Shown piece by piece: positions 1 to 37,271 of a stretch of DNA of 64,000 nt; the first letter of the stretch is position 1; the number at the start of each line of letters is the position of its first letter. The notes below the pieces were generated by a model, which saw only the letters and a list, made by a program, of their open reading frames with translations, was not told the origin of the DNA and ran no database searches. The stretch is from Styela clava (lineage: Eukaryota), in the NCBI RefSeq assembly GCF_964204865.1, contig NC_135254.1, positions 11,160,001 through 11,224,000 on the forward strand. The letters run 5' to 3'. Made by a program: the position numbers and the translations under genes.

Positions 1-767
1 AGATAAGATATATAGGTCATTAATCTAAATAGTCGTTAATTGGGGTAAATAGTTTACTTGATTTTTTTATCCCACGTGAAATTCCCAGAAGGACATTGTC
101 ATTATAGTGAGTTACTTCTAATTTATGAAATTTTGATTTTTTGGAATAATAGGGTGACATCATTTTGTTTCGCCGACTTAATATTAATAAAATGTCTACA
201 ATCTACATTAATTATGTTTATATTACCCGGTGTCTCCAAAGCATCACTTGTATTTATTTCATTTATGGTAGGTCTTGCACTGTTTTTAAATCTTAATCGA
301 ATTTTTAATATTATGTATATTTATTCTCACCTGATACATCCTAGAATAGTAATCTTTACAATGTTTTCCATACTCTGACAAATAGAGTATATAGTCACGA
401 AAATATAGTTTTTACAGGTAACCCAATGAAATCGCTATTGCTAAACTTTTTAAGTATAGTCTACTACGCAGTCTTCAAACGCGCTACTGGAATGACTAAA
501 CTTTCCGATAAAGGTTTGCTCTTTTCACTGCGTCTGCGGAATTTTTATGCCAGTATTATTTCCAAAAATGTCTGCGATTTGGGAAGTGCTTCCTCTTGGT
601 TGTTTCCTTATGCGTGCGTTGATTTGAATTGCTTTTACGTCTCGTGCTCATCACTATCAGACGACATTTCATCGTTGTATCGTGGAAAATTTGCTTCAAC
701 CGAACATTCATGAACTTGACTTGTGTTTCCTTGTCGAAGACCCAATATTGGAAGCAATTTTAGGTAG

Positions 768-929
768 GCTACTCCCAAAGTATGTGAACCAGGATAGAGT
801 TAGGCTATAATTTTAGGTAATAAAACTAAAATAAAAATGGAATAAAATTATGGCCTAACCCTGACCTCGTTGGTAAACATACTACGTTCCGGTGCCCACC
901 ATCTTGGTTCACATACTTCGGTAGTACCC
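768..929. mobile_element. Hairpin MITE of the ...AAGTATGTG(A/C)ACCAAGATGG... family
   Basis: Imperfect terminal inverted repeats ggctactcccaaagtatgtgaacca / tggttcacatacttcggtagtaccc; related copies near 8505, 23946, 60954. Confidence 0.65.
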
Positions 930-1121
930 AATTTTACCATTGAATTTCACATTTGATACAGTGATAAAATAGGCATAGGTGCAGGTTTTTATGAAATGTT
1001 CAGGCAGCAATTTTGCTTGAAGTGTTCGTTGAAGTAATAATGGTATGAGCGTGCTGACATACATTGATAAATATGTAATGCGACGCAATCGCGTTTCTGT
1101 ATCTTTACCACAGATTTACAC

Positions 1122-30723: not shown

Positions 30724-32178
30724 CAGGGGTTCTCAAACTTTTGGCGTTGCGGAGCCCTTGAAAAGGTTGACTATTATTCACGGAGCCCCAAAATAAATGT
30801 TAAAATTGTTACTTTCTGATTAATATTCCTGAGTAAGTTAAACGTACTTTACTCAATTTAAATACTAAACACTTTTAATAGGGTTAATACAAGTCATAAA
30901 TAAATCTAAATTTCAAAGATAAATTGTATATACTAAAGCTATAAATTTGACACATGACAAACATATTAATAAATTAGGGGTCGAATCTTTTCCCCTCTTG
31001 ACAATTTTGAAAGACTTAAAAGGCTGCTAATAACGTGCGCGATTGCATTTTGTTACAATCGCCGATTGTTTTCGTCAGCATGGCGTGTTTTTGAACCTCA
31101 AACATCTTTACGCCGGTGTTTATTCTCCCTAAATAAAAAATTTCCTTCGGCATATGCATGTATTGTTCCACAATGACGATGATAATTGCTTTTTCTTTCT
31201 CGTGGGGAATTATGAGTTCAATGTGAAAAACATGTTACCATATTATAATCATCGACGACGAAATGCTAAAAATAATAGTTAATAAAGAGGTAAATCTGCA
31301 ATTCAAATTTCTTGATTAAAAAGCGGCCTTCTAAAATATTAAACTAAAACTTAATATGGAAGATAACACTATAAGTTTTGTTTCAGCAGACTCACGTCAG
31401 AATAAAAACGCTGTTATAGACATCGAAAATCATAAAATTTGGTGTTATGTTAGGTTTTCGGTTATTCATCGTAGTAACTGCGAAATTGAAACACAGTCAT
31501 TTAATTATGCGTGCGATGTACCATTTTTCCTTTCTGAAACTACCGACAGAGCCGCATGCACTAAAATAAATTTCTATCGTTCGTATTTTGCCAAGACCTT
31601 GTGATTTTTCAAACGGCGACATCTTGCTTAAAAATAATCTCGAGTGCGAAAGAACAAATAAAGTTTAACAAATCCCAAAATCGCAAAAATACGACTCCAT
31701 TTTATTTATAGTTAGCAGTTTATCACGCAGTTTATGTTATTTTAGACTAGTATTTTATCATTTTAGTAATCCTAATAGTAATTTCGAATCGAATGTGAGT
31801 AACGATGAGCACAAATAAATTATTACGACAAGACCCTTTAGATGCTCGCATCGGTCATGAATTGAATATTTTACGCAACAGAGATCTCGTTATCCGTTTT
31901 TTTTGAATCGTCAAGAATGTTGCGCGTAAATTTCCGATTTCAATTTTGAACCTCCTCCCTCTTAAGAATCCTGGCTGCGCTCCTGCTTATAAATAATGTC
32001 ATTTTTTAATTCCGCCCCTTTGCCATATTTCGAGGCTATATTTGTCAAATTTCATCAAAGCTAGTATTGCTTCTAGGAACAGTTTTAAATTAGCCAAGTC
32101 AGTATTTTGAAAAGTAATCGAATAGCTCGCGGAGCCCCTGGGTTACTCTCGCGGAGCGGAGCACTTTGAGAACCTATG
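30724..32178. mobile_element. Non-autonomous hAT (Charlie-like) element
   Basis: CAGGGGTTCTCAAA / TTTGAGAACCTATG; exact 8-bp TSD CTGTACTG; subterminal CGGAGCCCC motifs. Confidence 0.85.
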
Positions 32179-32770
32179 CTGTACTGTATAGAAACTTCTG
32201 GTAAAATCTAGGATGACCTTTGACTCTAACTTAACAGTAGCAATGATTGCTTCCGAGTCGGCCTGTTGCACGGTTTGCGCGAAACTCTATTATAGCTGTC
32301 TTGTGTCTGCTGGTCTGAGTGTTGCATCAGCATTCCATTTTGCAGAAAGATTTGGTTGCCGAAGGCTTACAGTGCATTTCTTTCGTAATGTCAATCACCA
32401 GGCATGAAATATAGCTCGAAAAAATGAATCTTGTTCACAAAACCTCATGCCAAATGTAGTCTAAACACTGAAACAGAGTTGTTATAAGTGAAAACAAGAA
32501 AATGTCAATTGCTAGATAGACAATGGGACCCCAAAGATATAACTCTTCAAGTACAAAATGTTATAATAGTACGACTGTACGGACGTACGGTAATATTACT
32601 AACCTATAACTGCAAAAACTGTATAACATTGAATTTGATAAATATCTGAATAGGCTATATCACTGTATCATGTTACCGTACCGGTATGGAGTTCTGAAAA
32701 TAAACTAACTAGGCTATATGATTACAGGATTTAGGCTAAATTGTCGAATGTATGAACTAGACCAGTCTGC

Positions 32771-33086
32771 CAGTGGTTCTCAAACTTTTTAAGCCTTTGT
32801 CGATTCTCGCTCCCCACTTTAAAAATAACCAGCTAGCAATAAGCTGCAAATAACAGATACGGTATTAAGGCGAAAAGATGTTTTATTCGAAAAACAACTC
32901 GGAAATACGTCTGTAGGTTGATGGAACGTGAATAGTGAAATAAATGAAAAGTTTTGACATGTAAATATCCAAAATAAAGCAGGCAAGATCAAATCTAACA
33001 AATATTTTCATTTTTAATTATTTCACCCCCTCAAAAACTTATCACGCCCCCATTGTGGGGCGCGCCCCACTGTTTGAGAACCACTG
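32771..33086. mobile_element. hAT (Charlie-like) MITE
   Basis: Perfect TIR CAGTGGTTCTCAAAC / GTTTGAGAACCACTG; ACCAGTC lies near both ends but the left copy is offset by 3 nt. Confidence 0.8.
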
Positions 33087-33587
33087 AACCAGTCAATTCA
33101 TGGATTTGTAAATGATTTATGTTTTAAATTAACAATACCTGAATATTGGTATTTATTGTGCATTAGGGCATAGTTTTCCGATTCCTAGATCTCCCAATAT
33201 TTGGTTCATTAAAACAAAATTCTGAAATCTATTTGTATCTGAAACGAGGGCCTCTTGCACAATGGCAGATGCGTCAGATTGTGTCACATAATATAAAACA
33301 ATCTTGATGTGCATTGGCCATCACATGAACAAAATTGCTTCTTTTGCCTAAAACTACAGAATGCTACAAACAGTAAATTTTTTTCTTTTGGTAAATCGGA
33401 TTATTTTTTTCAAAAGAATCCAATGGTTACGTTTCTAGATTGTGATTTCTTTTAGTTTATTGCTCAGTGCCAGTTTGCTAATTTGTGTCGATATGGAAGC
33501 CTAAACTGTCTCGTTAAGGGGGCTATTCTCAAAATAGGACAACTTGTCGTACTGTTCTAATGTGAAATTAATTTTATTTATTTAAAC

Positions 33588-33948
33588 CAGGGATGTGCAA
33601 TCTTTATTACAGGAGGGCCAGATACAAGTAACTATGTGAAGCCGTGGGTCGCACCTTCATTTAGGATGGTCTTTCCATTAGTTTCAGGCACAAAAAATTA
33701 TACTTCCATTATTATATAAAAATTATAACAATATGTATTATGCAACAGGATTTTACTAGCTAGTTTTGCTAATATGACAATGCCACTCAGGTACTGGTAT
33801 AGGCTTTGCGACGCCAATGGATTGAAATTGCTCGCACGTATTAGATTAACTAAACTAAAAACTCGTTTTGCGGGCACACTATTCAAAATTGGTACTTCTC
33901 CACGGGCTGCACAATTTTTTCTTGCGGGTCGCAGTTTGCACACGCCTG
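33588..33948. mobile_element. hAT-type MITE just upstream of the kinase CDS
   Basis: CAGGGATGTGCAA / TTGCACACGCCTG; exact 8-bp TSD ATTTAAAC. Confidence 0.85.
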
Positions 33949-34153
33949 ATTTAAACTAAGAAAAAAACGATCAGCTTTTTCTGATGTACCAATCCTTACT
34001 GAGGTGATCAGTTGATTGGTATCCTAGTTGGTAAGAGTATATTTCGGTATTTCTCAATGTAATGATGTAGCATAGGATCTACACGGAAATAATAGAATAA
34101 AACTGTTTTAGTATTAATCATTAACATTTTGCATTCTATTTAAAGCAACACCA

Positions 34154-36319
34154 ATGATAACATCTAAACCTCAATCTATTCCCAAATCTACTTTAAATTC
34201 AACCAATCGTCCAAATTTGCAAACGAACCAGAGCAAAGAGAAGCAGTCCGTAGAAACGTTCGACAATAACTTTGAGAATGGCGACATTCTCTTGTGTCTA
34301 AATCCCGTTGAGGATTTGAGCAATCAAAATTTCTTGTCCCAATCAAGGGAAAAGAAAAAGGTGATTTTCAAGAACCCAATCATCCAAGATGATTCCATCA
34401 AGTCAGAAAATCCAAAGAAGCGTTCTAAATCTAAGAAACAGCCACAGGTGACAACAGAGGTTGTAAACAGAAGCAAAAAAAGCTTGCTGAAAGTTTCCGT
34501 GCCCTATCATTTTGACAATGGCTTGAATGTCACATGGAGGTATACATCTACGAGATGGGCTGAAAGACTCGAGCATCTCTCTCAATTGGCACCAGGTGCA
34601 ATTAAAGTTGTGCAGTCAAAATCTTCGAACGATGCTTCTGCTTTTTACTGTGAGAATCAAAGCCATTTTATTCTGGGTAATGGGCCAGATTTCAGCACCT
34701 CCATGTTGGGAATTCTGAATAAAACCACAGAAGTTCTGATAAAGAAAATCAATGTGAAACGTGTTCCATTGCTGCTAAATGAGGTACATGTTAAATCTCT
34801 TGTTTCCTTGCCAAAATCGCCTCACATTGCTCATATTTATTTTATCGTGAAGGATAAAACGCATTTCTATGTAGTGAGAGAGTTGGGAGAGAATTCATTG
34901 AGGTATGTGATGAGAATGAGGCAGTATCTTTTCGACTCAACCAAACAACCATTGGAGTACAAACAACTTTGTCACTCTATTGCAAAATCACTTGCAGTGC
35001 TACATGGTAGTGACGTTGTTCATATGGCAATTAAACCTGAAAATGTTTTTGTTACCAACTCAGGAAATGCTATATTATCTGACTATGGCATGCATTCCAG
35101 ATCTGAAACGAAGAAGCAACAATTGTCTAACGGTAGTGGATCCCTTTGCTGGCTTCCTAGTGAGGCATTAGGAAAGGTAGACAAACCACAGTATAACAAG
35201 GCATCTGATATCGCTCCGCTTGGCATGTTGTTTTACTATATAATTACTGAAGGTAAGCATCCATTTGGTGATCCAGAAAGTGCTGCAGATACCTGTATGA
35301 ACAACATTCTACATGGGCAGTACAATTTGAAACTGATTACGGATCCACTTGCTCATCACTTGATACAAAATATGATTTACAAAGAACCAGAAAAAAGGTT
35401 TTCGATAGATAAGATTCTCAGTCATCCATATTTTTGGTCCGATTCCGAGAAAAATGTTTTTGTTAAATACCTGGTTAAGATTGTTGCTTTTGTATTGAAT
35501 GATGATATTTGCGACAAAAAAGCTAATGGTGTTCTACAAAAAATTAGGCTTGAAGGATCGCATGTGATACAGAATTTTGTTGAAATTGGAAGTTGTTTGG
35601 AAATTCCTTCAAAATTGAAAAATAATTTGACTGCAATATTACAATATGTCTTCGAATTTTCTAAGAGCAAAACCCATGACCTCAAAGAGAATGATATTTT
35701 CAGAGATTTTTGCAACATGTACCCAGGATTGTTGCTTGATTACTATTCAGAAATTACCATTGAAGATATGACAAATATGGTTGACAGTGTCAAAAGAGCT
35801 GCTGTGGAAAAGGTCAATCAATATCCAGATTTTATAGATTTGCGTACTTTGAAATCGACTTTGTCAGCTGACAGTGGTGTTGTATCTCCAAGTATGGATG
35901 TCCCAGTTGCAAAAGGAAATGGAAAAGAAAGAAATATAGGAGAATACTATGATATTGACACATTTTCATTTGATAGCAAACGCACCAGGAATCGCAACTA
36001 TTCTGATTGTTGTACATCAACTACTACTGATGATGGAATTGATCTTCTTTCTCCAATGTCTGGAAGTTTTACAGACGAAAACATGTTTTCATCTCCGGTT
36101 AAAATATTTCCAAATAATTCTCATGAATACAGCGACAAATGGAAATCATCAAATCATAGCATTATTAGCCCAGGAAGTTCTATAGACAACCATTACGAAT
36201 TCGATGGATTGGGATATTCAAATAGTGTGCCAGATTGTCGTGAGGAAACAAGTATGAAGAGTAAACGATTTTTAGCATCATTTATGCCTTTATGGACAGA
36301 TATGGATGAATTAGACTGA
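34154..36319 (+). CDS. IRE1/RNase L-like pseudokinase with degenerate KEN-like region, 721 aa, intronless CDS
   Basis: Kinase fold: LGNGPDFS, EVLIKK, HMAIKPENV, LSDYG, GSLCWLPSE, SDIAPLGMLFYYIITEGKHPFG, PEKRFSIDKILSHPYFWS. G-x-HPFG and HP(F/Y)FW are IRE1/RNase L hallmarks. No signal peptide, TM segment or ankyrin repeats visible. Splice-acceptor-like tttaaag 8 nt before the ATG. Confidence 0.85.
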   Translation: MITSKPQSIPKSTLNSTNRPNLQTNQSKEKQSVETFDNNFENGDILLCLNPVEDLSNQNFLSQSREKKKVIFKNPIIQDDSIKSENPKKRSKSKKQPQVTTEVVNRSKKSLLKVSVPYHFDNGLNVTWRYTSTRWAERLEHLSQLAPGAIKVVQSKSSNDASAFYCENQSHFILGNGPDFSTSMLGILNKTTEVLIKKINVKRVPLLLNEVHVKSLVSLPKSPHIAHIYFIVKDKTHFYVVRELGENSLRYVMRMRQYLFDSTKQPLEYKQLCHSIAKSLAVLHGSDVVHMAIKPENVFVTNSGNAILSDYGMHSRSETKKQQLSNGSGSLCWLPSEALGKVDKPQYNKASDIAPLGMLFYYIITEGKHPFGDPESAADTCMNNILHGQYNLKLITDPLAHHLIQNMIYKEPEKRFSIDKILSHPYFWSDSEKNVFVKYLVKIVAFVLNDDICDKKANGVLQKIRLEGSHVIQNFVEIGSCLEIPSKLKNNLTAILQYVFEFSKSKTHDLKENDIFRDFCNMYPGLLLDYYSEITIEDMTNMVDSVKRAAVEKVNQYPDFIDLRTLKSTLSADSGVVSPSMDVPVAKGNGKERNIGEYYDIDTFSFDSKRTRNRNYSDCCTSTTTDDGIDLLSPMSGSFTDENMFSSPVKIFPNNSHEYSDKWKSSNHSIISPGSSIDNHYEFDGLGYSNSVPDCREETSMKSKRFLASFMPLWTDMDELD

Positions 36320-37271
36320 ACCAGTCATTTATGTTATTGAAAATGATTCATTTACTAAACTAATGTGAATATGTTCTATGTTTTGATAAGGGGAAGACTG
36401 GGAAACATGACAAGCTGTAGTTCAATACTTTCACTTCTAAAATACAGTTTATATTCATTCTTTTGTTCCATATGCACTACATTTCATGCCATGCTGCTTT
36501 ATACCAGAAGCAGAAAAAATGTATTGAATTGTTTTTCAAAAAAATTTACAATCACAATTGAAACTTACAACTTGGAAATCCAACTTGATTGTTGAGAATA
36601 TTAAAAATCAGCAAATACGAGTTATGTGTTCCATAATATCATCACACGATACATTTATGATTTTATGTTATTATTCAGTTTTCTAATGCCAAATTTTCAC
36701 TAAAAGTAATTTCATATAGTTCATTGATATTACAATTGAGGGAATATTGTAAATCGTTAAAATCGGTGTTCATGTATTGTGGTGTGAATAAGATGTAACA
36801 CTTGAAATATAAAATATCTAATTTTTAAATTTGTCATTTATTCAATTTTCGCCATCCTAATCTAAATAGATATTATGCCATATTTTTCCAAAGAATGTTA
36901 TGATTTACCCACGATCAGGCCATAATTATGCTCCCAAATTTTGATCTTGTTTGCTATTGAATATGGAGTTGTAACTTGTAATACTCATATTATAGTCATT
37001 TTTGAAACCCAAATAAATGCTATAAGCTATGTGATATTTGTTTTAGGAAGTATGTAACCAAATTATTGTGCCATATTGTTCAATTTGCTACTACCAAATT
37101 TTTTAGCAGTTTTGATTACATTTCATATGTTTTGGTATTGGTGTGTGCTAGCTATACTATGGTGTTTTGACAAAATATAGCAACTTGTGCATGACCATCA
37201 TCTTTGTCTAAATATTCTAGATATTCGAACAATTGTTAGGCATGTAGTTTTACTTAATTATAGCTAAAAAC

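What the first reader, a model, noticed from the sequence alone, without database searches (positions are those of the whole stretch)
34154..36319. Soluble RNase L/IRE1-like protein with apparently dead kinase and dead KEN nuclease
Seen: catalytic loop HMAIKPEN (aa about 290; HRD Asp replaced by Ala), DYG for DFG, atypical Gly loop, with the VxIK lysine kept. After HPYFWS a shortened KEN-like region (LTAILQYVFEF..FCNMYPGLL) lacks the R-N-x-x-x-H motif of IRE1/RNase L. No luminal/TM domain (so not canonical IRE1) and no ankyrin repeats (so not canonical RNase L). Established: RNase L itself is a pseudokinase-KEN protein, and OAS genes exist in invertebrates including tunicates without a recognised RNase L partner. 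Inference: a scaffold, decoy or dominant-negative regulator of a kinase-KEN ribonuclease pathway; the MHC-paralogon neighbours favour the RNASEL lineage over ERN1/2. The long intact ORF suggests selection.
Basis: partly seen in the sequence, partly recalled or inferred. Interest (0 to 1): 0.75.

Follow-up and report, generated by a model that had tools for sequence, protein, structure and literature searches.

The report
Doubly dead IRE1-like scaffold gene
This sea-squirt gene encodes a relative of the stress and antiviral enzymes IRE1 and RNase L that has lost the catalytic residues of both its kinase and its RNA-cutting domain, yet is expressed and conserved across tunicates, so it probably acts as a docking or regulatory protein.

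Summary
Window 34154-36319 (+) is an intact 721-codon single-exon ORF. Its kinase domain (aa 174-428) is closest to IRE1 but reads HMA for HRD and DYG for DFG. The region after HPYFW is a degenerate KEN domain without Y/R/N/H. Pfam's KEN model and single-sequence searches miss it. A profile built only from its orthologues aligns in one stretch through the IRE1 KEN domain (E 3.6e-42). A domain-only AlphaFold model ranks Ire1 and RNase L KEN domains first and second of 48,161 chains.

The gene is real. Transcript-like contigs from three studies cover it, and one begins with a spliced leader joined 8 nt before the ATG. Listed polymorphisms give pN/pS near 0.2.

It is the single orthologue here of an unnamed tunicate family (Phallusia CAB3261554.1, "LOC100177124"). 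All members lack the catalytic Asp and the RNase motif. They share a KVxF (PP1-type) motif and a C-terminal TDxDELD peptide. Two family lines (Phallusia; unassigned JGI contigs) carry N-terminal ankyrin repeats; this one does not.

It most likely works as a non-enzymatic adaptor. The RNASEL-lineage argument is not supported: canonical IRE1 lies 261 kb away, and trees place the family among soluble kinase-KEN proteins. An earlier scan note described another member of this genome's kinase-KEN expansion.

The parts
34144..34145 (+). AG acceptor for spliced-leader trans-splicing; the mature mRNA starts at 34146, 8 nt before the ATG
   Evidence: The run X9 contig fits from 34143 and carries 8 loose letters GTATAATT before it. 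GTATAATTAAG followed by GT occurs 57 times forward in the genome, 42 of them in a same-strand tandem array on C4. One copy reads ...ctgtataattaag|gtaagt. A pyrimidine-rich tract precedes the AG.
34154..36319 (+). Single-exon ORF, 721 aa plus stop
34355..34369 (+). KKVIF (aa 68-72): candidate PP1-docking RVxF-type motif in the disordered N-terminal region
   Evidence: The motif sits at the same alignment column in 4 of 4 full-length family members: KKVIF, KHVHF, KSVHF, KQVSF. Binding was not tested.
34673..35437 (+). Pseudokinase domain, aa 174-428
   Evidence: Pfam Pkinase E 5.4e-28. The best PDB sequences are IRE1, E 1.6e-21. AF2 gives pLDDT mostly above 90.
34742..34744 (+). K197, the VAIK-type lysine, retained
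35021..35044 (+). Catalytic loop HMAIKPEN: the catalytic Asp is replaced by Ala and the Asn is kept
   Evidence: All family sequences that cover this loop lack the Asp: HMA x3, HKS, HRN.
35081..35089 (+). DYG in place of DFG; the metal-binding Asp is kept
35438..35788 (+). Degenerate KEN-like helical domain, aa 429-545
   Evidence: Family-only profile against IRE1, one stretch through the KEN domain. hhalign probability 88.9%. AF2 plus VIA: Ire1 Z 7.4 and RNase L Z 5.6 are ranks 1 and 2 of 48,161 chains. The whole model aligns to human IRE1 563-958.
35627..35677 (+). Helix corresponding to the RNase active-site helix (LTAILQYVFEFSKSKTH); the R, N and H positions are substituted
35696..35746 (+). 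IFRDFCNMYPGLLLDYY, the only well-conserved KEN motif (F..F...[FY]P.LL..Y)
36290..36316 (+). C-terminal peptide LWTDMDELD
   Evidence: Conserved at the extreme C-terminus in 5 sequences: ours, P0012, P0013, P0162, P0164. It is 90% identical to P0012 over the last 10 residues. The pattern has no second true copy in the genome.
36320..36652 (+). 3' UTR as far as the longest transcript-like contig reaches; ATTAAA at 36600

Best explanation
This is a real, expressed, spliced-leader trans-spliced, intronless gene. It encodes a non-catalytic member of the IRE1-like kinase-KEN superfamily. It is this genome's single orthologue of an unnamed family known so far from tunicates (Phallusia CAB3261554.1 'LOC100177124', a Ciona savignyi fragment) and from unassigned marine contigs. 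In that family the loss of the kinase catalytic Asp and of the KEN RNase residues is shared by all members, so it is old.

Shown: the pseudokinase keeps the ATP-contacting Lys, the catalytic-loop Asn and the DxG Asp, and it is the most constrained part. The KEN-like domain keeps the fold but little sequence. Two short motifs in the disordered flanks are conserved: KVxF before the kinase, and [W/Y/L]TD[M/I/L][D/N]ELD at the very C-terminus.

Inferred: the protein works as an adaptor, not as an enzyme. The pseudokinase/KEN module would act as a (possibly nucleotide-bound) dimerisation or docking surface for an active kinase-KEN relative (IRE1 or one of the many soluble paralogues). The flanking motifs would recruit partners. 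The KVxF motif suggests protein phosphatase 1, which would make the protein a negative regulator of a phosphorylation-gated RNase.
For: Identity and family. An exhaustive HMMER search gives orthologue-level hits P0012 (46% identity), P0013 (35%, aligned over query 8-392), P0014 and P0015, all far above the next kinases. This genome holds one clear orthologue of P0013 (E 5.5e-74; the next hit is 1.4e-17).

Dead sites. All family sequences that cover the loop read HMA, HKS or HRN, and none has RNxxxH.

KEN homology. The family-only profile aligns to IRE1 in one stretch through the KEN domain, E 3.6e-42. hhalign gives 88.9%, E 2.4e-6. VIA puts Ire1 and RNase L KEN domains at ranks 1 and 2 of 48,161 chains. 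The whole model scores Z 30 against IRE1 563-958, against 26.5 or less for kinase-only hits.

Expression. Contigs from 3 studies cover the ORF at depth 41-175, against 0-9 on unique flanks. There is a spliced-leader junction 8 nt before the ATG.

Constraint. Of the listed SNPs, 12 are synonymous and 9 are not, with none of the 9 in the kinase domain. One indel is in frame (12 nt). Binomial p = 0.0002.

Regional identity to P0012: kinase 50%, KEN-like 16%, last ten residues 90%.

KVxF lies at one alignment column in 4 of 4 full-length members. The chance of any such motif in a shuffled 140-aa segment is 0.15-0.23 per protein.
Against: No binding, nucleotide or activity data exist. RVxF-type motifs are short and common. 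The alpha-C Glu is not conserved in the family (K in Phallusia, R in C. savignyi), so nucleotide binding is uncertain. The KEN-like domain is the least conserved part (15-16% identity) and carries 5 of the 9 listed non-synonymous SNPs, so it may be a relaxed spacer and not a docking surface. Foldseek on the domain-only model gave no hit at E<=0.001; the best was Ire1 at E 1.1. The VIA Z values of 7.4 and 5.6 are modest, and the AF2 alignments included true KEN domains. The SNP list is incomplete for runs X5 and X9. The runs are only guessed to be RNA. No heterodimer partner has been identified.
Confidence: 0.6

Rival explanations
1. The protein is a heterodimerising decoy or dominant-negative partner of active kinase-KEN RNases. 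It acts purely by occupying the dimer interface, and the KVxF motif is not a phosphatase site.
For: The kinase-KEN fold is retained and superposes on IRE1 over about 345 residues. The genome holds at least 42 KEN matches, including canonical IRE1, that could be partners. The pseudokinase domain is strongly constrained.
Against: The KEN-like domain evolves fast. In IRE1 the KEN domain forms part of the RNase-active dimer (recalled). This reading does not explain the two conserved flank motifs. No co-evolving partner was found.
Confidence: 0.2
2. The protein is a degenerate tunicate counterpart of RNase L, that is, an ankyrin-pseudokinase-KEN sensor of 2-5A or another nucleotide messenger that has lost nuclease activity.
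For: Two family lines, P0013 (Phallusia) and P0015/P0162 (unassigned JGI contigs), carry N-terminal ankyrin repeats followed by the pseudokinase and the KEN-like domain. The RNase L KEN domain is rank 2 of 48,161 chains.
Against: This ORF has no ankyrin repeats, and its mRNA is trans-spliced 8 nt before the ATG. In P0013 the repeats (Pfam 12-102) lie about 650 residues before the kinase. RNase L is not among the best 60 PDB matches of the family profile, while IRE1 scores E 3.6e-42. No OAS1_C match was found in the genome (inconclusive).
Confidence: 0.06
3. The protein is still an enzyme: an atypical kinase that works without the HRD Asp, or an RNase that uses other residues.
For: Lys197, Asn297 and Asp310 are kept. 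Some kinases with altered catalytic loops keep weak activity (recalled; HER3 has HRN, as P0015 does).
Against: In 3 family members the base position is Ala, which cannot act as a base. The alpha-C Glu is not conserved. No family member has R, N or H at the RNase positions, and P0012 lacks part of that helix.
Confidence: 0.07
4. The gene is neutral or decaying: an intronless retrocopy that happens to be open.
For: It is intronless. The KEN-like domain is poorly conserved. A frameshifted partial copy of its tail exists on C2.
Against: Orthologues with the same dead sites and end motifs occur in distant ascidians. pN/pS is about 0.2. The one listed indel is in frame. Transcript-like contigs carry a spliced leader.
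Confidence: 0.03

Closest known systems
IRE1 (ERN1/ERN2; yeast Ire1), cytosolic kinase-KEN module
   Same: Closest solved relatives by sequence: E 1.6e-21 for the single sequence and 3.6e-42 for the family profile. Closest by structure: Z about 30, 343-359 residues aligned, human IRE1 563-958. It shares the GxHPFG and HPxFW motifs and the F..F...FP.LL..Y motif of the KEN domain.
   Different: No luminal sensor and no transmembrane segment. HRD reads HMA. The KEN Y/R/N/H positions read L/F/E/S. It lies outside the canonical IRE1 clade in both trees. The genome has its own canonical IRE1 261 kb away.
RNase L (RNASEL)
   Same: Soluble pseudokinase followed by a KEN fold. The RNase L KEN domain is rank 2 in the domain-only fold search, Z 5.6. 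Two family lines have N-terminal ankyrin repeats.
   Different: This protein has no ankyrin repeats. The KEN catalytic residues are absent, whereas RNase L is an active nuclease. RNase L is not among the best 60 sequence matches. No OAS was found in this genome.
Soluble kinase-KEN proteins of deuterostomes: this genome's 42 KEN matches, amphioxus XP_078677147.1, teleost 'IRE1-like' proteins, Ptychodera GT4-conflict-kinase-KEN proteins
   Same: Same kinase-KEN core without a luminal or transmembrane part. In both trees the family groups with these, with unstarred support of 89-93. Many copies in this genome are also intronless.
   Different: Most of these keep HRD, DFG and LLRFIRNxxxH. They are lineage-specific expansions, while this gene is single-copy here and conserved across ascidians.
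Pseudokinase partners of active paralogues (STRAD, KSR, HER3, FAM20A; recalled)
   Same: A catalytically impaired kinase fold retained under selection beside active relatives. This is what the protein most likely works like.
   Different: No partner is known here. This protein also carries a second dead enzymatic domain.
PP1-interacting proteins with an RVxF docking motif (e.g. Nek2 KVHF, spinophilin KIHF; recalled)
   Same: [KR]-x(0,1)-[VI]-x-[FW] in a disordered region, conserved at one alignment column in 4 of 4 full-length family members.
   Different: The evidence is a motif match only; binding was not tested.

Membership tests
Canonical IRE1 | N-terminal luminal sensor domain and a transmembrane segment | tested here: not met
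   Pfam finds only the kinase. The maximum 19-residue hydrophobicity is 1.47. The mRNA is trans-spliced 8 nt before the ATG.
Canonical IRE1 | Active kinase motifs (HRD Asp, DFG) | tested here: not met
   HMAIKPEN and DYG.
Canonical IRE1 | KEN RNase residues Y, R, N, H (R-N-x-x-x-H) | tested here: not met
   L/F/E/S in alignment A4 and in the HMM alignment to murine IRE1. The alternative MAFFT register also lacks R and N.
RNase L | N-terminal ankyrin repeats that bind 2-5A, directly before the pseudokinase | tested here: not met
   No Ank hit in this ORF and no ankyrin exon in the window by tblastn. P0013 and P0015 have about 3 repeats far upstream. 2-5A binding is not testable here.
RNase L | Catalytically active KEN domain | tested here: not met
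RNase L | OAS partner in the same genome | tested here: inconclusive
   PF10421 gave 0 matches, but the search is exon by exon and no control genome rang.
RNase L | Phylogenetic grouping with vertebrate RNase L | not testable with these tools
   No RNase L sequence was available as a stored protein. RNase L is absent from the best 60 PDB matches.
Kinase-KEN (IRE1/RNase L) superfamily | IRE1-type kinase domain ending in HPxFW | tested here: met
   The best PDB matches are all IRE1. In the kinase-only tree the family falls with the kinase-KEN rows against 7 outgroup kinases, support 92.
Kinase-KEN (IRE1/RNase L) superfamily | KEN (PF06479) domain after the kinase | tested here: met
   Homology and fold are met by the family-only profile, hhalign and the fold search. 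The Pfam model itself does not hit, single-sequence phmmer does not hit, and the own-genome PF06479 scan did not list this ORF.
Tunicate 'LOC100177124' pseudokinase family (unnamed) | No catalytic Asp, DYG-type motif, degenerate KEN, KVxF before the kinase, C-terminal TDxDELD | tested here: met
   The family is monophyletic with support 100 in both trees.
PP1-interacting proteins | Functional RVxF docking motif that binds the PP1 catalytic subunit | not testable with these tools
   The motif is present and positionally conserved. Binding is unknown.

The most novel reading that the evidence does not exclude
The family is the first conserved, doubly inactivated member of the IRE1/RNase L superfamily. 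It acts as a dedicated brake on phosphorylation-gated kinase-KEN RNases. It docks on an active relative (IRE1 or an immune-type soluble paralogue) through its pseudokinase/KEN module, and it brings PP1 through the KVxF motif. The C-terminal TDxDELD peptide targets or tethers the complex.
Probability: 0.15. Interest if true: 0.8.

Novelty: new variant of a known kind. Interest (0 to 1): 0.5.

Why it matters
IRE1 and RNase L are the two studied members of the kinase-KEN family, and both are active RNases. A family in which both domains are dead, yet which is kept as one expressed copy across ascidians, points to non-catalytic regulation in this family. That would parallel pseudokinase partners in other kinase families.

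The gene sits in a genome with dozens of soluble kinase-KEN genes whose biology is unstudied. It offers a tractable entry point, because Ciona and Phallusia have orthologues and genetic tools.

The conserved KVxF and C-terminal motifs give direct, cheap hypotheses to test. If the protein proves to have no partners, it is only an uncharacterised lineage-restricted pseudokinase.

Tried and rejected
Pfam on the ORF gave no KEN hit at E<=1. phmmer of the C-terminal 132 aa against PDB gave 3 weak hits, none of them KEN. An HMM of this genome's paralogue KEN regions scored the region at only 17.1 bits, against a best shuffle of 6.1, and most of that score came from the HPYFW-proximal helix. Foldseek on the domain-only model gave 0 hits at E<=0.001; rank 1 was Ire1 at E 1.1.

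The search for homologous proteins (word index) found only the protein itself and distant kinases: 11 hits among 8000 scored candidates. The orthologues came only from the exhaustive search.

The ESM Atlas on the N-terminal 470 aa of P0013 returned generic ankyrin clusters only. tblastn of P0013 and P0015 on the window found no ankyrin or helical-module exon. A 114-aa stretch of the P0013 helical module found nothing significant in the genome; the best E was 0.096. The whole-P0013 genome search scored only 33 of 303 candidates, all on the kinase part. Absence of that module is therefore likely but not proven.

The OAS1_C search gave 0 matches and is inconclusive. The C-terminal peptide pattern found only this gene and one TDVDEFD look-alike.

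Literature. Four full-text searches found no paper on this family, on LOC100177124 or on a dead KEN protein. Of PMC3710099 I read passages only. It reports KEN expansions in Oikopleura and monocots and gives the KEN active site as 'mostly conserved (95%)'. All other papers were seen as search listings only. No supplements were consulted.

RNase L could not be placed in a tree. dN/dS between species could not be computed because no orthologue DNA was available. The trees are 'quick' IQ-TREE runs. The family's exact position is not starred, and no AU test was run.

I considered and rejected a recent duplicate of the neighbouring IRE1. The family stem is long (0.8-1.06), the family lies outside the starred IRE1 clade, and it has orthologues in other ascidians.
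Full report
WHAT IS THERE. Window 34154-36319 (+) is one open frame of 721 codons from ATG to TGA. It lies in a 377-Mb eukaryotic genome, and the window is G000:C5:11160001-11224000. Pfam sees only a protein kinase domain, aa 174-427, E 5.4e-28. It sees no ankyrin, no luminal domain and no PF06479 even at E<=1. No 19-residue window approaches transmembrane hydrophobicity; the maximum is 1.47.

IS THE C-TERMINAL PART A KEN DOMAIN? Simple searches say nothing. phmmer of aa 429-560 against PDB gave 3 weak hits, none of them KEN. A local HMM of this genome's KEN regions gave 17.1 bits, against at most 6.1 for 500 shuffles, and most of that came from the first helix. Three stronger tests agree that it is one.

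(i) A profile built only from the dead family (alignment A2, 8 sequences, no true KEN protein) hits mammalian IRE1 at E 3.6e-42. It does so in one continuous stretch, profile 650-1009 against 4pl3 residues 34-408. The stretch runs through the KEN domain to ...[22 protein letters not shown] and puts the family's 'llkliqkCvqe' under LLRAMRNKKHH. Kinases without a KEN domain stop near profile position 903-925.

(ii) hhalign compared the family's post-HPYFW region (5 sequences) with 48 true KEN regions. It gave probability 88.9% and E 2.4e-6 in the same register.

(iii) AlphaFold2 of aa 150-585 (53-row alignment; pLDDT 86.9, pTM 0.85) gives seven helices after the kinase at pLDDT 76-89. All top Foldseek hits are IRE1 kinase-RNase structures, E about 1e-19, with 391-448 alignment columns. 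VIA aligns 343-359 residues, model 1..392-395 to human IRE1 563..958, at Z about 30. Kinase-only hits stop at model residue about 280 with Z of 26.5 or less.

A domain-only model (aa 424-560; pLDDT 84.3) found nothing significant by Foldseek; rank 1 was yeast Ire1, E 1.1, TMq 0.45. In the Foldseek-independent VIA scan of 48,161 chains, only two chains reached Z>=5. They were Ire1 (3fbv_A, Z 7.4, 106 residues, chain 977-1099) and RNase L (4o1o_A, Z 5.6, chain 580-722), both over their KEN domains.

Two caveats apply. These Z values are modest for a helical domain, and both AF2 alignments contained true KEN sequences. The ESM Atlas also ranks kinase+Ribonuc_2-5A clusters first (0.99), which is a lead only.

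The RNase residues are gone. In A4 and in the HMM alignment, Y/R/N/H read L/F/E/S. The alternative MAFFT register with a 4-residue insert reads K-S-K-T-H-D. That register also lacks R and N and is not conserved in the orthologues.

IT IS A MEMBER OF A CONSERVED FAMILY. The word-index search found only the protein itself. The exhaustive HMMER search of 1.84 billion representatives found relatives far above all other kinases:
- P0012: 653 aa, a Logan contig, 46% identity.
- P0013: 1419 aa, 35% identity, aligned over query 8-392.
- P0014: 299 aa, 42% identity.
- P0015: 1080 aa.
- P0025: 340 aa.

P0013 is Phallusia mammillata CAB3261554.1, 'uncharacterized protein LOC100177124'. P0014 is a Ciona savignyi fragment. 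P0015 and P0025, with cluster mates P0162 and P0164, are unnamed JGI/Tara sequences. This genome has one clear counterpart of P0013 (E 5.5e-74; the next hit is 1.4e-17), and our protein has no close paralogue.

Every family sequence that covers the catalytic loop lacks the Asp (HMA in three, HKS, HRN). The DxG motif reads DYG, DYH or DFG. None has RNxxxH. The double inactivation is therefore ancestral to the family and not a recent accident.

Four other features stand out in the family alignment.
- The VAIK Lys, the loop Asn and the DxG Asp are kept.
- The alpha-C Glu is not conserved (K in Phallusia, R in C. savignyi).
- A [KR]x(0,1)[VI]x[FW] motif (ours KKVIF, aa 68-72) sits at the same column in 4 of 4 full-length members, inside otherwise unalignable low-complexity sequence. 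Shuffled 140-aa segments contain any such motif 15-23% of the time.
- All 5 sequences with a complete C-terminus end in [W/Y/L]TD[M/I/L][D/N]ELD. That pattern has no second true copy in the genome.

Identity of our protein to P0012 is 50% in the kinase, 16% in the KEN-like part and 90% in the last ten residues.

P0013 and P0015/P0162 carry about three N-terminal ankyrin repeats and a roughly 400-aa helical module. Our ORF and P0012 do not. No such exon was found in the window, and none reached significance in the genome (best E 0.096; one search scored only kinase-region candidates).

IS IT EXPRESSED AND CONSTRAINED? Thirteen runs hold the stretch. Nine small ones from three studies are guessed to be RNA. 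Laying X1, X5, X9 and the DNA-like X10 gave the following.
- X1 has one colinear 2640-nt contig, 34013-36652, at depth 41, against 3-9 on unique flanks.
- X5 has one contig, 34010-36265, at depth 64.
- X9 has contigs 34143-34504 and 34506-35354, at depth 120-175.
- X10 is flat at about 55 across unique sequence, as DNA should be.
- No joint falls inside the ORF, so the ORF is a single exon.

The X9 contig begins with 8 letters that do not fit the genome (GTATAATT), followed by aag at 34143-34145. I searched the genome for that 11-mer followed by GT. It occurs 57 times forward (11 reverse; controls 16 and 24). Forty-two of the forward copies form a same-strand tandem array on C4:23.296-23.483 Mb, often 831 nt apart. 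One copy reads ...ctgtataattaag|gtaagt. This is what a spliced-leader RNA gene array looks like. The mRNA is therefore trans-spliced at the AG of 34144-34145, 8 nt before the ATG. That shows transcription, and it shows that this mRNA has no upstream coding exon.

Of the 21 variants listed inside the ORF, 12 are synonymous and 9 are not, with 443 synonymous and 1720 non-synonymous sites (pN/pS about 0.19; binomial p 0.0002). For X1, whose 19 differences are all listed, the ORF counts are 8 and 8 (p 0.008). None of the 9 non-synonymous changes lies in the kinase domain, and 5 lie in the KEN-like part. The one listed indel in the ORF is 12 nt, which is in frame. The variant table was truncated: 6 of X5's 25 differences and 10 of X9's 15 are not shown.

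WHERE DOES IT SIT IN THE SUPERFAMILY? PF06479 has 42 matches in this genome. The best is a 1268-codon open frame with luminal, transmembrane, kinase and KEN parts, which is canonical IRE1. It lies at C5:11457697-11458074 (-), about 261 kb downstream of our ORF. The rest are mostly intronless 400-500-aa soluble kinase-KEN ORFs. Some have dead kinases but intact RNRxxH (L006, L008), and some have degenerate KEN motifs (L012, L014). Our ORF is not among the 42.

Two trees were built.
- A kinase+KEN tree (53 rows, 356 columns, quick IQ-TREE) makes the family one group (SH-aLRT 100, stem 1.06). It places the family with soluble kinase-KEN proteins, with unstarred support of 92-93. These are amphioxus P0111, Ptychodera GT4-conflict-kinase-KEN proteins P0041 and P0052, and teleost 'IRE1-like' proteins P0021, P0023 and P0030 (names). 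The family lies apart from a starred canonical IRE1 clade that contains this genome's IRE1.
- A kinase-only tree of 72 rows gives the same picture, with seven clear outgroup kinases on the other side of a branch with support 92. Twelve rows that I had labelled 'non-KEN' fell inside the superfamily, so my regular-expression labels were imperfect.

No RNase L sequence could be included. The ankyrin repeats in two family lines are the only point in its favour. PF10421 (OAS1_C) gave no match here, which is inconclusive.

HOW IT MOST LIKELY WORKS. Shown: the fold is kept, the catalytic residues of both domains are lost in all members, selection acts mainly on the pseudokinase and on two short flank motifs, the gene is single-copy, and it is expressed. 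Inferred: the protein is a non-enzymatic adaptor. The kinase-KEN module of IRE1 and RNase L acts through dimerisation (established for both; recalled). A dead copy is therefore a natural docking partner for an active relative. The KVxF motif is of the type that docks protein phosphatase 1 (recalled consensus). The acidic C-terminal peptide with an aromatic or hydrophobic residue could be another docking site; LIR-like is a guess. I put the identity claims near 0.9, the general adaptor reading near 0.6, and the specific 'PP1-recruiting brake on kinase-KEN RNases' at about 0.15.

WHAT IS KNOWN. Anantharaman et al. 2013 (PMC3710099; passages read) place KEN in the HEPN superfamily. They note expansions of solo KEN domains in Oikopleura and monocots, and they give the active site as conserved in about 95% of KEN domains. 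Four full-text searches found nothing on this family, on LOC100177124 or on a doubly dead kinase-KEN protein. The proteins exist in databases as 'uncharacterized'.

It calls the organism Styela clava and calls the family large and unstudied. I did not check the species name. The expansion I saw for myself.

VERDICT.

Noticed in passing
G000:C4:23296314-23483191 (locus L026 = one unit): A tandem array of at least 42 same-strand copies of ...ctgtataattaag|gtaagt, often 831 nt apart. It looks like the spliced-leader RNA gene cluster of this genome.
   Followed up: partly
G000:C5:11457697-11458074 (-), loci L001/L011: Canonical IRE1 (luminal, transmembrane, kinase and KEN parts) reads as one 1268-codon open frame, apparently intronless over that span. 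It lies about 261 kb downstream of the finding on the same contig.
   Followed up: partly
G000, 42 places listed (C1, C2, C3, C6, C8 and others); loci L002-L020: A large expansion of mostly intronless soluble kinase-KEN ORFs of 400-500 aa. L006 and L008 have degenerate kinase motifs but intact RNRxxH. L012 (QK for RN) and L014 (RH) have degenerate KEN motifs. C3:5.77-5.91 Mb holds a cluster of short KEN-only frames.
   Followed up: partly
L021 5004-5317 (G000:C2:18602233-18602546): A partial copy of the tail of this gene (aa 608-707, 45-56% identity), broken by a frameshift. It has no kinase part nearby within 10 kb and is probably a dead fragment.
   Followed up: partly
window 35354: The run X9 contig leaves the ORF at 35354 and continues for 255 letters that lie nowhere in the 6-kb stretch. 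It may be an assembly chimera or an alternative 3' structure. It is unexplained.
   Followed up: no
window 31001-32200, 32800-33200, 33600-34000: In the DNA-like run X10 these stretches have depths in the thousands to tens of thousands, against about 55 for unique sequence. The 3 kb upstream of the gene is therefore mostly repeats.
   Followed up: no
proteins P0041, P0052 (Ptychodera flava), P0088 (teleost): Relatives of the kinase-KEN core are fused to a 'GT4-conflict' glycosyltransferase domain or to CARD. This fits an immune or conflict role for the soluble branch of the superfamily.
   Followed up: no
window 34310: Run X5 carries a 12-nt in-frame deletion in the N-terminal disordered region, relative to the reference and to X1, X9 and X10.
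   Followed up: no
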